Positions 52,604-58,040 of a stretch of 64,000 bases of DNA are shown one piece after another. The stretch lies in the sequence record NC_019526.1. One strand, written 5' to 3'. Under the pieces are notes generated by a model. It was not told the DNA's origin. It was given only the letters and a program-made list of their open reading frames with translations, and searched no databases. Position 1 is the first letter of the stretch. The number at the start of each line of letters is the position of its first letter. The position numbers were made by a program, and so were the translations under genes.

Positions 52604-52927
52604 ATGTGTACTGAAGCAAGAAGATATGTTTATATTTTGGTTCGCAAAGATTTAGAACTAAAGGATATTATTGTTCAAACTGCTCATGCTTCATATGAAA
52701 GTGCAAAAGAATTCAAAAATAATGCTGATAGAACATCTATTATAGTTTTAGAAGTCAAAGACTTATACAAACTAAATGATGCTAAAAGTTATTTAAATTC
52801 TAATGGTATTAATTGGACTGTGTATACTGAAAAATCTTTAGGATTTGGAGAAACTGCTATCAGTACTGAAGCACTCAATAACGAACAACGAAAAATTATG
52901 CGTAAGTTCCAATTATTGAAAGTATAA
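52604..52927 (+). CDS. PTH2-like peptidyl-tRNA hydrolase (second copy)
   Basis: YVYILVRKDL...VQTAHAS...IIVLEV...ETAIST. Confidence 0.7.
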   Translation: MCTEARRYVYILVRKDLELKDIIVQTAHASYESAKEFKNNADRTSIIVLEVKDLYKLNDAKSYLNSNGINWTVYTEKSLGFGETAISTEALNNEQRKIMRKFQLLKV

Positions 52928-52940
52928 ATATAATAACAAA

Positions 52941-54376: not shown

Positions 54377-54431
54377 TACCATACAATATGGGAATAGTTA
54401 GAAGATATTCCCAATTTTAATTTAAAAAGTG

Positions 54432-54460
54432 TTGAACAAAAAGTTCAATAATGATATAAT
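54432..54460 (+). promoter_or_regulatory. Promoter with TTGAAC-N5-GTTCAA inverted repeat
   Basis: TTGAAC-17-TATAAT upstream of tRNA-Ser(GCT). Confidence 0.7.
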
Positions 54461-54524
54461 GGTATTATAAAAGGTTGTAATACTTAATATTAACTTTTAA
54501 GAAGATAATTAGTTATCATACACA

Positions 54525-54616
<92 letters not shown>

Positions 54617-54633
54617 TAAAATTCAATTAAAAA

Positions 54634-54767
<134 letters not shown>

Positions 54768-54775
54768 GATTTTAT

Positions 54776-54825
54776 GGATAGTTATAAAGTTGAATTAACA
54801 GCGACACTTAAAATTGTCACTATCC
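54776..54825 (+). ncRNA. 50-nt three-way-junction RNA, copy 3
   Basis: GGATAGT-TATAAA-GTTG AATTAA CAGC-GACA CTTAAAAT TGTC-ACTATCC. Confidence 0.75.
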
Positions 54826-54846
54826 AAATTTTAATTTAAATAGTAC

Positions 54847-54875
54847 TTGACAAAAATGTTCAGTACTGATACATA
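54847..54875 (+). promoter_or_regulatory. Promoter TTGACA-17-TACATA
   Basis: Variant of the tRNA-cluster promoter repeat, upstream of tRNA(CAT). Confidence 0.5.
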
Positions 54876-54884
54876 AAGAATATT

Positions 54885-54962
54885 GGCCCTTTACTCTCAA
54901 GTGGTTAGAGAATCCGACTCATAATCGGTAGGCTCTGAGTTCGAATCTCAGAAGGGCCACCA
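54885..54962 (+). tRNA. tRNA(CAT), probably Ile2 (lysidine) rather than Met
   Basis: GGCCCTT/AAGGGCC-ACCA acceptor and CGACTCATAATCG anticodon arm resemble E. coli ileX. Confidence 0.85.
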
Positions 54963-54981
54963 AATTTTAAAACATAATCTA

Positions 54982-55689
54982 ATGAAAATACAATTACAAT
55001 ATCCATATAATCAAGATTGGGATACAGGTTCATTAACAATTAATCCCGAAGGTCGAAGAACTGTTATTTTATATAACAAAACTACAAAAATCACAAGTAG
55101 TACTGCTTATGCACGATATTTGTTAGCAGTGCACAATAACAGATATTTAACTGAAAATGAAGAAGCTGACCATATTGATGAAGATTTCACTAATGATGAT
55201 ATATCTAATCTTCAAATTTTGACAATAGAAGAACATAGAGCTAAATCAATTGCGAATGGTATTCAAGCTAAATATGATGAATTTGTGTGTAAAGGTTGTG
55301 GAATAAAATTTTTAAGAAGACATAATCAAGTTAAGTCATATACAAAATATTGTAGTAAAAAATGTTCTTGGAAAAATAATCCTCCACCAACAAAAACAAA
55401 AAATGGTGACACGACAATCGATTATGATAAAGTAAAAGAATATATAAACGATGGATTGTCAGATACTGAAATTGCAAAGAAAATGAATATAAATCGCAAT
55501 TCAGTACTAAATTATAGAACTAAACACAATATACCTTCTAAAAAATTTGCTAATGTTAATATTTTAGAAGATAATATTGATGAAATAAAACAACGTTTGC
55601 TTTCTGGTGAAAAGAAAGTTGATATATACAAAAGCTATGGTTCTTCAAAAAATGTTTTTGCAAGATTTTTAAAGAGACATGGATTATAA
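54982..55689 (+). mobile_element. HNH homing endonuclease with HTH tail, inside the tRNA cluster
   Basis: EEADHIDEDFTNDDISNLQILTIEEH (HNH), CxxC/YCSKKC, two HTH-like segments. Confidence 0.8.
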
Positions 55690-55698
55690 TAGAATAAT

Positions 55699-55771
55699 GA
55701 CTCTGTAGCACAATCGGTGGTGCGATTGACTGTTAATCAATTGGTTGGGGATTCGAGTTCCTCCAGAGTCG
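55699..55771 (+). tRNA. trnN: tRNA-Asn(GTT)
   Basis: GACTCTG/CAGAGTC, ATTGA-CTGTTAA-TCAAT; no encoded CCA. Confidence 0.9.
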
Positions 55772-55790
55772 CTTAACAAACCAAAGAATT

Positions 55791-55937
55791 GTACCTAAAT
55801 AACGAGTATATGGATTCTCTATGATTGTCCCTGTATGAGTTAGAGAGATTATTCATAAGAAGTCGAGTGTATAGATTCTCAAAGAAATGATTGTTTATAC
55901 ATGAGTTATCTTAAAACGAATATCTCAAGGTACACCA
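55791..55937 (+). ncRNA. Candidate CCA-ended RNA with pseudoknot (~147 nt)
   Basis: GTACCT/AGGTAC + ACCA; TCTCTA/TAGAGA with TATGAGT/ATTCATA pseudoknot. Confidence 0.5.
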
Positions 55938-55944
55938 AACAATT

Positions 55945-55993
55945 GACTCTGTAGTTCAGTTGGTAGATCTTATATAGTTACCAACCAGAGTCG
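55945..55993 (+). ncRNA. tRNA-Asn-derived mini hairpin (lacks anticodon and T arms)
   Basis: Acceptor strands identical to tRNA-Asn (GACTCTG/CAGAGTC-GCT); D-arm-like GTTCAGTTGGTAGA. Confidence 0.55.
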
Positions 55994-56001
55994 CTTACAA
56001 T

Positions 56002-56066
56002 GGAAGGTGGTAATACGTCAGTATTACCTTTTAAGACCGAAGATATGAGTATCTTCCCTTCCACCA
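56002..56066 (+). ncRNA. 65-nt tRNA-like RNA ending in ACCA
   Basis: GGAAGG/CCTTCC-ACCA; GGTAATAC-GTCA-GTATTACC; GAAGATA-TGAG-TATCTTC. Confidence 0.6.
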
Positions 56067-56068
56067 CA

Positions 56069-56157
56069 CATTGTACTCTTCTCCCGTAAGGAGAATGACA
56101 AAAAACTATCCGAAAGATAGAAAGCCTGAAATAACAGGGTGCAATTAAATTACAATG
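56069..56157 (+). ncRNA. Candidate four-way-junction RNA
   Basis: CATTGTA/TACAATG enclosing three hairpins. Confidence 0.5.
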
Positions 56158-56160
56158 GGA

Positions 56161-56353
<193 letters not shown>

Positions 56354-56377
56354 TTAATTTAAATGGAGTACTGAATA

Positions 56378-56578
56378 ATGTCCAAATATGTTAATCGTCA
56401 AAAACGAAAAGCACGTACTAAGGACGAAATTCTACAGTTGATTCAAAAAAATCAAAAAGATGTAGTTATTGAAGAATATATTTTTCAGTACGGTAATCAA
56501 CAATCAATGGTACAAGAAAGTAATGGTAAGTATCATTCTGAACATTACGACCTTATTAAAAGAATTCTTTTGAAATAA
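56378..56578 (+). CDS. Hypothetical protein
   Basis: 66 aa ORF, GGAG RBS. Confidence 0.65.
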   Translation: MSKYVNRQKRKARTKDEILQLIQKNQKDVVIEEYIFQYGNQQSMVQESNGKYHSEHYDLIKRILLK

Positions 56579-56733
56579 ACAATAATACTCATCATCTAAT
56601 ATCAGTACTGATGCGTATCAGCAGGTGGCTTGATGGGCAGTACTGACAGGATACATCGTTCTCCGGTGGCGGGTTCGGTGGATATACGTAAAGTCGTATT
56701 GGGTATACCAAATATAATAATAAAAATATGTAA

Positions 56734-57942: not shown

Positions 57943-58040
57943 GGACATACTGCGGGATCTGTTTTTAAGGCTTAGGTACTTCAGTACTAAAACAATACCT
58001 TAGAAACGGAGTCCAAGTTGAATTCTTGGAATGTCCACCA
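57943..58040 (+). ncRNA. 98-nt tRNA-like RNA (6-bp acceptor + 6-bp T stem, ACCA end)
   Basis: GGACAT/ATGTCC-ACCA; TCCAAG-TTGAATT-CTTGGA; 12-bp central helix. Confidence 0.65.

What the first reader, a model, noticed from the sequence alone, without database searches (positions are those of the whole stretch)
56002..56066. 65-nt CCA-ended RNA carrying a tRNA-Ser-like acceptor stem but no anticodon arm
The acceptor GGAAGG/CCTTCC-ACCA matches the first 6 bp and 3' end of tRNA-Ser(TGA) at 54680. It is followed by two perfect hairpins (8 bp and 7 bp), one positioned to stack like a T arm. The perfect stems argue against random decay. It could serve as a decoy for enzymes that attack the tRNA acceptor end (toxSAS/CapRel-type pyrophosphorylation, MenT-type nucleotidyltransferases); this is inference.
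Basis: partly seen in the sequence, partly recalled or inferred. Interest (0 to 1): 0.7.

Follow-up and report, generated by a model that had tools for sequence, protein, structure and literature searches.

The report
Anticodon-less tRNA-Ser mimic in jumbo phage

Summary
The window is Klebsiella jumbo phage vB_KleM_RaK2. Bases 56002-56066 form a 6-bp acceptor-like helix identical to that of the phage tRNA-Ser(UGA), then an 8-bp and a 7-bp perfect hairpin, then ACCA. The 7-bp hairpin abuts the acceptor 3' strand. MFE is -24.1 kcal/mol, z = -4.6. It is no known RNA family.

New findings:
- It is a chimera. Its ends come from tRNA-Ser(UGA) and its core is a paralogue of the 5' leader of tRNA-Ser(GCU).
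- It occurs only in the RaK2/K64-1 sublineage, inside an inserted cassette of HNH endonuclease, tRNA-Asn, a 173-nt spacer and a decaying mini-Asn.
- Across 13 haplotypes all 6 variable sites are unpaired (0/42 paired; p = 0.001-0.013). No compensatory change exists, and one haplotype has CCA changed to CTA.
- It fills a slot, NCCA plus 3 nt upstream of a conserved cloverleaf-like 76-nt RNA, that relatives fill with tRNA-Met or another CCA-ended tRNA-like element.
- One RNA-labelled library has contigs only over 55846-56135.

Best reading (about 0.4): a surrogate tRNA module in a multi-unit precursor, cut by RNase P and trimmed to CCA. The decoy or serylation idea is untested (about 0.13). This scan had already flagged the surrounding RNA island and a second mimic at 57943-58040.

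The parts
56002..56066 (+). miniSer, a 65-nt anticodon-less tRNA-like three-way junction. Acceptor 56002-07/56057-62; hairpin 1 56009-28; linker 56029-38; hairpin 2 in the T-arm position 56039-56; ACCA 56063-66.
   Evidence: Variation is confined to loop 1, the linker and the CCA.
55945..55996 (+). miniAsn, a truncated tRNA-Asn copy. The 7-bp acceptor and the GCTT trailer are identical to the real tRNA-Asn. Its first 23 nt are a tRNA-Asn acceptor plus D arm. A 7-bp hairpin abuts the acceptor 3' strand. There is no CCA.
   Evidence: z = -3.6. Of 7 variable sites, 2 break stems, so it looks unconstrained.
55773..55944 (+). Structured spacer of about 173 nt between tRNA-Asn and miniAsn. It is found only in RaK2-type phages.
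55699..55772 (+). tRNA-Asn(GUU), the first RNA of the inserted cassette.
54982..55689 (+). HNH-type homing endonuclease ORF between tRNA-Met and tRNA-Asn. Sister haplotypes carry a different 141-aa HNH at this site.
54885..54962 (+). tRNA-Met(CAU), without an intron in RaK2. It is the first gene of the transcription unit. A promoter-like TTGACA-N17-TACATA lies at 54847-54875; I read it by eye by analogy with the units at 54432 and 54639.
56070..56145 (+). Conserved cloverleaf-like 'block' RNA with a 7-bp closing helix and three hairpins. It starts 3 nt after the miniSer CCA.
   Evidence: Two compensatory pairs. z = -4.2.
54461..54528 (+). 5' leader of tRNA-Ser(GCU). It is a paralogue of the miniSer core (5' strand, hairpin 1, linker, hairpin 2) but with imperfect stems.
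   Evidence: 27 of 33 identical; best local hit in the whole genome; 0 of 5000 shuffles reach it. Weak fold, z = -1.1.
54680..54767 (+). tRNA-Ser(UGA), the source of the miniSer ends: 6 nt at the 5' end and about 17 nt at the 3' end including ACCA.

Best explanation
miniSer is a young, lineage-specific, tRNA-derived module. Illegitimate recombination inside the tRNA cluster joined the acceptor ends of the phage tRNA-Ser(UGA) to a two-hairpin core homologous to the leader of tRNA-Ser(GCU).

It is transcribed from the tRNA-Met promoter as part of a long unit: tRNA-Met, HNH, tRNA-Asn, spacer, miniAsn, miniSer, block. As RNA it folds into an anticodon-less tRNA mimic. Its acceptor and T-position helix stack into 13 bp, and U(-1), G(+1)-C, A73 and CCA are the features of a bacterial RNase P model hairpin substrate.

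It sits exactly where relatives have tRNA-Met or another CCA-ended tRNA-like element, that is, NCCA plus 3 nt before the conserved cloverleaf-like block. It therefore most likely serves as a surrogate tRNA partner. RNase P would cut at its 5' end and at the block's 5' end, and exonucleases would trim back to CCA. This would keep the block's and its own ends defined after the HNH/tRNA-Asn cassette separated the block from tRNA-Met.

Shown here: the structure, the chimeric origin, the slot conservation and the constraint on stems. Inferred: transcription as one unit, RNase P cleavage, and stability of a 65-nt product.
For: - Fold and statistics.
- Stem constraint: 0/42 paired versus 6/23 unpaired variable sites in 13 haplotypes from 21 contigs; Fisher p = 0.0012, or 0.013 if the loop cluster counts as one event.
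- Chimeric origin: leader paralogy of 27/33, the best hit in the genome; ends from tRNA-Ser(UGA).
- Slot conservation: the block lies 3 nt after ACCA or GCCA of tRNA-Met in 121Q, Muenster, L009, L011 and L012, of a different tRNA-like element in Erwinia phage Hallingskeid, and of miniSer in RaK2, K64-1, L010 and L014.
- The block is a conserved structured RNA with compensatory pairs.
- No + strand ORF of at least 35 aa lies between 55690 and 56377, and no terminator-like site is called in 54400-56700.
- RNA-labelled run X17 has contigs only at 55846-56004 and 55977-56135 of the 5.9 kb laid.
- E. coli RNase P cleaves acceptor/T-stem-loop model hairpins and uses the RCCA interaction and a 12-bp measure (PMC11143913).
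Against: - No read-level RNA ends are available. The X17 signal is two low-depth contigs in a library only guessed to be RNA.
- There are no compensatory changes, because all copies are at least 95% alike.
- One haplotype has CTA instead of CCA.
- The stack is 13 bp, not 12, and the T-position loop is a tetraloop without the T-loop motif.
- RNase E and exonucleases could process the block without any tRNA-like neighbour.
- The slot conservation could be an accident of recombination at the CCACCA microhomology.
Confidence: 0.4

Rival explanations
1. Neutral recombination scar. miniSer would be a by-product of homing-endonuclease-driven shuffling of tRNA genes, like the adjacent miniAsn, with no function. 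Its stems would look intact only because the element is young.
For: - It is confined to one sublineage, with no homologue in Muenster, 121Q or elsewhere in RaK2.
- It lies in a mosaic region with swapped HNH genes and presence or absence of an intron.
- Its neighbour miniAsn accumulates stem-breaking changes.
- CCA is changed to CTA in one haplotype.
- No covariation is seen.
Against: - All six variable sites avoid the 42 paired bases, while unpaired sites vary at 26%.
- The three helices are perfect, whereas the leader paralogue has three broken pairs in hairpin 1 and a weak fold.
- The junction geometry is exactly tRNA-like, which a chance scar would rarely give (0/200 shuffles).
Confidence: 0.22
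2. Acceptor-end mimic acting in trans. The matured CCA-ended RNA would be a decoy for enzymes that modify or cut tRNA 3' ends or acceptor stems, or a mini-tRNA that seryl-tRNA synthetase can charge, since that enzyme does not read the anticodon.
For: - The first five acceptor base pairs are identical to phage and E. coli tRNA-Ser(UGA).
- A long 8-bp extra hairpin could imitate the tRNA-Ser variable arm (inference).
- The phage invests in tRNA-end maintenance: a CCA-adding enzyme gp031, Pnk, an RNA ligase and Pth2 (PMC3622015).
- A second CCA-ended mimic with the same topology lies at 57943-58040.
Against: - No experimental or comparative evidence supports it.
- Distribution is narrow and patchy.
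- A CCA-to-CTA haplotype exists.
- The discriminator is A, not G, and there is no D stem.
- The attempt to model it on SerRS was not run by the tool.
Confidence: 0.13
3. DNA-level signal. The two perfect palindromes would be protein-binding or cleavage-immunity sites, for example for the neighbouring HNH endonuclease. Alternatively, hairpin 1 plus its TTTT would be a weak attenuator.
For: - The palindrome arms are invariant while the centre of palindrome 1 is free to vary, as expected for a dyad site.
- HNH genes flank the cassette.
- Hairpin 1 is followed by UUUU.
Against: - This does not explain the third helix, GGAAGG/CCTTCC, closing both hairpins with tRNA geometry and ACCA.
- Two different HNH genes accompany the same element.
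- No terminator is called.
Confidence: 0.08
4. C4-like antisense regulator. The closed three-way junction would present its 10-nt linker, or its loops, to pair with a target such as the anticodon loop of tRNA-Ser(UGA). The linker is complementary to GGTCTT-AAAA of that loop, with one bulge.
For: The complementarity was read directly from the sequence. The architecture, a closing stem plus two hairpins plus NCCA, resembles the RNase P-processed phage C4 RNA (from memory; C4 is cited as an RNase P substrate in PMC11143913).
Against: - There is no Rfam C4 match.
- K64-1 changes a linker base that would pair.
- The complementarity was found post hoc.
Confidence: 0.04

Closest known systems
T4 RNAC/RNAD (species 1 and 2), small stable RNAs encoded in the T4 tRNA gene cluster
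   Same: These are non-tRNA small RNAs embedded among phage tRNA genes and made from the same transcripts. Their function is still unknown (PMC3014915, PMC9697503).
   Different: I tested no sequence relationship. miniSer is restricted to a sublineage of one genus and is visibly a chimera of tRNA-Ser gene parts. Its expression is not demonstrated.
RNase P model hairpin substrates and natural non-tRNA substrates (pre-4.5S RNA, phage P1/P7 C4 RNA)
   Same: They share an acceptor-like helix coaxial with a stem-loop, a G+1/C+72 pair and a 3' RCCA (PMC11143913).
   Different: The stack is 13 bp, there is a tetraloop instead of a T-loop, and an extra 8-bp hairpin is present. Cleavage is untested. 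There is no Rfam C4 hit.
tRNA gene fragments and pseudo-tRNAs in prokaryotic and phage genomes
   Same: It derives from tRNA gene ends, lies next to intact tRNAs and homing endonucleases, and is not callable as a tRNA.
   Different: The core is not tRNA-derived but leader-derived. The stems are perfect and invariant while the unpaired bases vary. The adjacent miniAsn behaves like an ordinary fragment; miniSer does not.
tmRNA tRNA-like domain, and mascRNA-type tRNA-like processing modules
   Same: These are anticodon-less acceptor/T-arm mimics with a CCA end. mascRNA-type elements act as RNase P-dependent punctuation for a neighbouring RNA.
   Different: There is no G3:U70 alanine identity, no T-loop and no tag ORF (ARAGORN found no tmRNA). 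mascRNA is eukaryotic and unrelated in sequence.

Membership tests
Canonical tRNA (Rfam RF00005) | Cloverleaf with a D arm, an anticodon arm with a 7-nt loop, and a T arm with a T-loop; detectable by the tRNA covariance model or ARAGORN | tested here: not met
   No call by ARAGORN or Rfam, at gathering threshold or at E<=10. The two internal hairpins carry 4-nt loops.
Canonical tRNA (Rfam RF00005) | Acceptor helix closed by the 5' and 3' ends, a discriminator base and 3' CCA | tested here: met
   GGAAGG/CCTTCC plus A plus CCA. One haplotype has CTA.
tRNA gene fragment / pseudogene | The retained parts are homologous to a parent tRNA gene | tested here: met
   6 nt at the 5' end and about 17 nt at the 3' end match tRNA-Ser(UGA). 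The core instead matches the tRNA-Ser(GCU) leader.
tRNA gene fragment / pseudogene | Unconstrained decay, with substitutions falling irrespective of pairing | tested here: not met
   0/42 paired versus 6/23 unpaired variable sites, p = 0.001-0.013. This contrasts with miniAsn.
RNase P model hairpin substrate | Acceptor helix stacked on a stem-loop (about 12 bp), G+1-C+72, and a 3' RCCA able to pair with the P15 GGU | tested here: met
   A 6+7 = 13-bp stack with no intervening base, U at -1, G1-C, and ACCA. Criteria are from PMC11143913.
RNase P model hairpin substrate | Actual cleavage by RNase P | not testable with these tools
   This needs an in vitro assay or end-mapping RNA-seq.
C4 antisense RNA (Rfam) | Match to the family covariance model | tested here: not met
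   No hit in the window at gathering threshold, or in 55700-56450 at E<=10.
tmRNA tRNA-like domain | G3:U70 pair, T-loop and an associated tag reading frame | tested here: not met
   The third pair is A3-U. ARAGORN reports no tmRNA.
SerRS substrate (tRNA-Ser identity set, from established literature, recalled) | Acceptor base pairs 1-5 of tRNA-Ser | tested here: met
   Identical to E. coli and phage tRNA-Ser(UGA).
SerRS substrate (tRNA-Ser identity set, from established literature, recalled) | Long variable arm in the correct orientation; D-stem C11-G24; G73 | tested here: inconclusive
   An 8-bp extra hairpin exists, but its geometry is unknown. There is no D stem and the discriminator is A.
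T4 RNAC/RNAD-type stable RNAs | Encoded within the phage tRNA cluster and released as a discrete stable RNA | tested here: inconclusive
   The location criterion is met. The only RNA evidence is two contigs in an RNA-labelled run, plus word matches in wastewater RNA libraries.

The most novel reading that the evidence does not exclude
miniSer, together with the similarly built 57943-58040 element, would be a phage-made anticodon-less mini-tRNA. It would be matured to a CCA end and act in trans at the acceptor end. Either it is charged by SerRS, or it soaks up host enzymes or toxins that modify or cut tRNA 3' ends. That would make it the first RNA decoy for acceptor-end-directed phage defence.
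Probability: 0.1. Interest if true: 0.85.

Novelty: new variant of a known kind. Interest (0 to 1): 0.42.

Why it matters
Phage tRNA clusters are usually read only as codon-supply or anti-defence tRNA sets. Here a tRNA cluster is caught making a new structured RNA from spare parts: tRNA ends joined to a leader. The product is kept under structural constraint and placed where relatives have a real tRNA.

If the surrogate-tRNA reading is right, it shows how RNA-processing context is preserved when homing endonucleases reshuffle tRNA operons. It also gives a handle on the conserved but unexplained 76-nt cloverleaf-like RNA shared by Alcyoneusvirus, Asteriusvirus and an Erwinia jumbo phage.

If the decoy or charging reading is right, it would be a new class of counter-defence RNA.

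In either case the element is short, bounded and easy to test by Northern blot, RNase P assay and deletion.

Tried and rejected
- **Known RNA families.** ARAGORN and Rfam, at gathering threshold and at E<=10, gave no family for the element.
- **Wider homologues.**
  - blastn against 50,697 phage records found only RaK2, K64-1 and OU509535.
  - An exact-pattern scan of IMG/VR found none.
  - Covariance model R1 found nothing credible in 121Q, Muenster or the rest of RaK2. The best non-self hits had E of 0.08-6. L009 and L013 could not be searched.
- **Protein-coding reading.** The annotated minus-strand ORF220w (55978-56163) has no homologue among 5.8 billion proteins except itself. It overlaps conserved RNA structure, so I rejected it as spurious.
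- **Generic scan.** My scan for acceptor plus abutting hairpin is swamped by AT-rich chance hits unless NCCA is required.
- **Terminator reading.** No terminator-like site was called.
- **SerRS docking.** Complex prediction accepted the job but did not fold it. This is no evidence either way.
- **Read-level RNA ends.** All runs are kept as contigs, and the table of variant letters from read laying was cut before the element. I recovered the variants through the look-up of encoding contigs instead.
- **Linker/anticodon-loop complementarity.** I noted it, but it is not conserved in K64-1 and was found post hoc, so I give it little weight.
- **Repeated-element origin.** Neither hairpin recurs elsewhere in the genome.

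Full report
**Identity and context**

The window is Klebsiella jumbo phage vB_KleM_RaK2 (JQ513383). Window coordinate plus 124000 gives the record coordinate.

The finding lies in the phage's tRNA cluster. ARAGORN and Rfam call eight tRNAs there: Leu, Gly, Arg, Ser-GCU, Ser-UGA, Met, Asn and Thr. Most of these units have their own TTGAAC-N17-TATAAT promoter.

The record annotates nothing on the + strand at 56002-56066. It annotates only a minus-strand 'ORF220w'. That ORF has no homologue among 5.8 billion proteins, and I regard it as spurious.

Reading, the 65 nt are laid out as follows:
- GGAAGG, then U.
- An 8-bp perfect hairpin with loop GUCA.
- A 10-nt linker, UUUUAAGACC.
- A 7-bp perfect hairpin with loop UGAG.
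- CCUUCC, with no base between hairpin 2 and this strand.
- ACCA.

This is the dominant MFE fold: -24.1 kcal/mol, 75% of the ensemble, z = -4.6, and 0 of 200 shuffles fold as well.

The acceptor and ACCA equal those of the phage tRNA-Ser(UGA) at 54680-54767. The first five base pairs also equal E. coli tRNA-Ser(UGA).

The base before G1 is U. Together with G1-C, A73 and CCA, this gives the features that bacterial RNase P uses on acceptor/T-stem-loop model hairpins (PMC11143913). The stack here is 13 bp rather than 12, and the loop is a tetraloop.

No Rfam family or tRNA/tmRNA finder recognises the element.

**A second mini element sits 6 nt upstream**

Bases 55945-55996 ('miniAsn') have these features:
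- The 7-bp acceptor and the GCTT trailer of the real tRNA-Asn at 55699-55772.
- A first 23 nt that are a typical tRNA-Asn acceptor plus D arm, matching many phage tRNA-Asn genes.
- A 7-bp hairpin abutting the acceptor 3' strand (z = -3.6).

So two acceptor-stem copies of neighbouring tRNAs stand in tandem.

**Where the element occurs**

Only RaK2, K64-1 and OU509535 among 50,697 phage records carry the region. Metagenomic contigs reached through the neighbouring proteins add more copies.

Sister phages arrange the locus differently:
- Muenster, KP13-7 and similar phages, and the contigs L009, L011 and L012, have tRNA-Met followed directly by a conserved RNA 'block'. That tRNA-Met carries a group I intron (Rfam 104 and 90 bits).
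- Escherichia phage 121Q has tRNA-Ser, tRNA-Met, block, tRNA-Asn.
- Erwinia phage Hallingskeid has a different CCA-ended tRNA-like element before the block.

In RaK2-type genomes a cassette lies between tRNA-Met and the block. It consists of an HNH endonuclease, tRNA-Asn, a 173-nt spacer, miniAsn and miniSer. Two different HNH genes, of 235 aa and 141 aa, occur with the same downstream cassette.

A covariance model of miniSer finds nothing credible in 121Q, Muenster or elsewhere in RaK2.

**The slot**

In every arrangement the block begins exactly 3 nt after an NCCA end:
- ACCA-CAC-ATTGTAC in RaK2, Muenster, L009 and L012.
- ACCA-AAT-ATTGCAC in 121Q.
- GCCA-AAT-ATTGTAC in Hallingskeid.

The block (56070-56145) folds as a 7-bp closing helix with three hairpins, a cloverleaf-like shape. 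It shows two compensatory pairs across genera.

miniSer is therefore the third kind of CCA-ended acceptor helix found in a conserved position. I read this as evidence that the block and its upstream partner are processed together, as in dimeric phage tRNA precursors. On this reading, miniSer preserves that context after the cassette insertion. This is inference.

**Origin**

The best local match to miniSer anywhere in the 346-kb genome is the 5' leader of tRNA-Ser(GCU) at 54461-54528. Across the 5' strand, hairpin 1 and the linker, 27 of 33 bases are identical. The score is 39, against at most 28 elsewhere in the genome and at most 27 in 5000 shuffles. Similarity continues by eye through hairpin 2.

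The leader has three broken pairs in hairpin 1 and folds weakly (z = -1.1). Muenster has the leader but no miniSer.

The 3' approximately 17 nt and the 5' 6 nt of miniSer match tRNA-Ser(UGA). miniSer is thus a chimera of parts found 1.3-1.5 kb upstream, and its helices are more perfect than those of the paralogue.

**Constraint**

From 21 contigs I obtained 13 haplotypes of 55690-56400. The variable sites by region are:

| Region | Variable sites | Where they fall |
|---|---|---|
| miniSer | 6 | 56017-56020 (loop 1: GUCA, AUCA, GGAC), 56038 (linker), 56065 (CCA to CUA in a haplotype seen in 7 contigs) |
| miniAsn | 7 | 2 break stems, 1 makes a G-U pair |
| Block | 2-3 | All outside helices |

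None of the 42 paired bases of miniSer varies. Fisher's test of 0/42 against 6/23 gives p = 0.0012. It gives p = 0.013 if the adjacent loop changes count as one event.

So the miniSer stems are under purifying selection, or the element is too young to tell. No compensatory change exists, so RNA-level selection is likely but not proven. The CUA haplotype shows that an encoded CCA is not strictly required. The phage encodes its own CCA-adding enzyme (PMC3622015).

**Expression**

All public runs are held as contigs, so RNA ends cannot be read.

In run X17, which is guessed to be RNA, the only good contigs on the 5.9 kb laid are 55846-56004 and 55977-56135. Each has one mismatch, at depth about 3. 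Neighbouring genes and tRNAs are not covered. Several wastewater RNA-seq libraries also hold words from 55945-56156.

This is a hint of a transcript spanning the spacer, both mini elements and the block. DNA carry-over is not excluded.

**Verdict**

The decoy function has no support here and remains a minority possibility.

The best-supported account is a recently assembled tRNA-like module that substitutes for a tRNA in a conserved processing slot (confidence about 0.4). A neutral recombination scar is the main rival (about 0.22).

The closest known things are the T4 RNAC/RNAD small RNAs of tRNA clusters, whose function is unknown, RNase P hairpin substrates, and tRNA gene fragments. It is a member of none by sequence.

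I rate it a new variant of a known kind, with moderate interest.

Noticed in passing
window 55945-55996: miniAsn is a truncated copy of tRNA-Asn. It keeps the acceptor, D-arm start and trailer, and has a new 7-bp hairpin made from D-loop sequence. Across haplotypes it collects stem-breaking changes, so it is probably a decaying fragment.
   Followed up: partly
window 56070-56145; L001:1510-1590; L002:1012-1090; L041:610-685: A cloverleaf-like RNA of about 76 nt is conserved in Alcyoneusvirus, Asteriusvirus and Erwinia phage Hallingskeid. It always starts 3 nt after an NCCA end and shows two compensatory pairs. It is absent from Rfam. It may be the more important unexplained RNA at this locus.
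   Followed up: partly
L002:710-958 (Muenster); L010:209-518; also L009, L011, L012: In relatives the tRNA-Met(CAU) gene is interrupted right after the anticodon by a group I intron (Rfam Intron_gpI, 104 and 90 bits). Genome annotations miss this tRNA. RaK2 and K64-1 have an intron-less tRNA-Met followed by a different HNH gene.
   Followed up: partly
window 57943-58040: A second CCA-ended anticodon-less tRNA mimic with the same topology: a 6-bp acceptor, a long hairpin, a 6-bp T-position arm with a 7-nt UUGAAUU loop, and ACCA. It lies 4 nt upstream of tRNA-Thr. z = -3.5. Among phage records it is present only in RaK2 and phiKp_21.
   Followed up: partly
window 56157-56221; L041:537-598: Another tRNA-like element, starting GGGACATGTAG and ending CATCCCC-GCCA and followed by TTTTT. 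It is highly variable among haplotypes. Its Hallingskeid and Muenster relatives begin GGGGCATGTAGCCGAG or GGGGTATGTATCCGAG, like a class II tRNA 5' end.
   Followed up: no
window 54461-54528: The unusually long 68-nt leader of tRNA-Ser(GCU) is a paralogue of the miniSer core. The more distant contig L009 lacks it; there the promoter abuts the tRNA directly.
   Followed up: yes
window 56029-56038 versus 54707-54717: The miniSer linker UUUUAAGACC is complementary to GGUCUU(G)AAAA of the anticodon stem-loop of tRNA-Ser(UGA), with the middle anticodon base bulged. K64-1 changes one pairing base. This is possibly chance.
   Followed up: partly
L002:1094-1177 (Muenster): The annotated 84-nt 'tRNA-Asn' has a GTT anticodon on a body with a long extra arm, which is class II-like. 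That is odd for tRNA-Asn.
   Followed up: no
window 55978-56163 minus strand: The annotated ORF220w overlaps miniSer and the block on the opposite strand and has no homologue. It is likely a spurious gene call.
   Followed up: yes
window 52605-52928: An ORF inside the tRNA cluster whose counterpart in L009 carries a weak PTH2 (peptidyl-tRNA hydrolase 2) Pfam hit. The RaK2 paper names a different ORF (ORF188) as Pth2.
   Followed up: no
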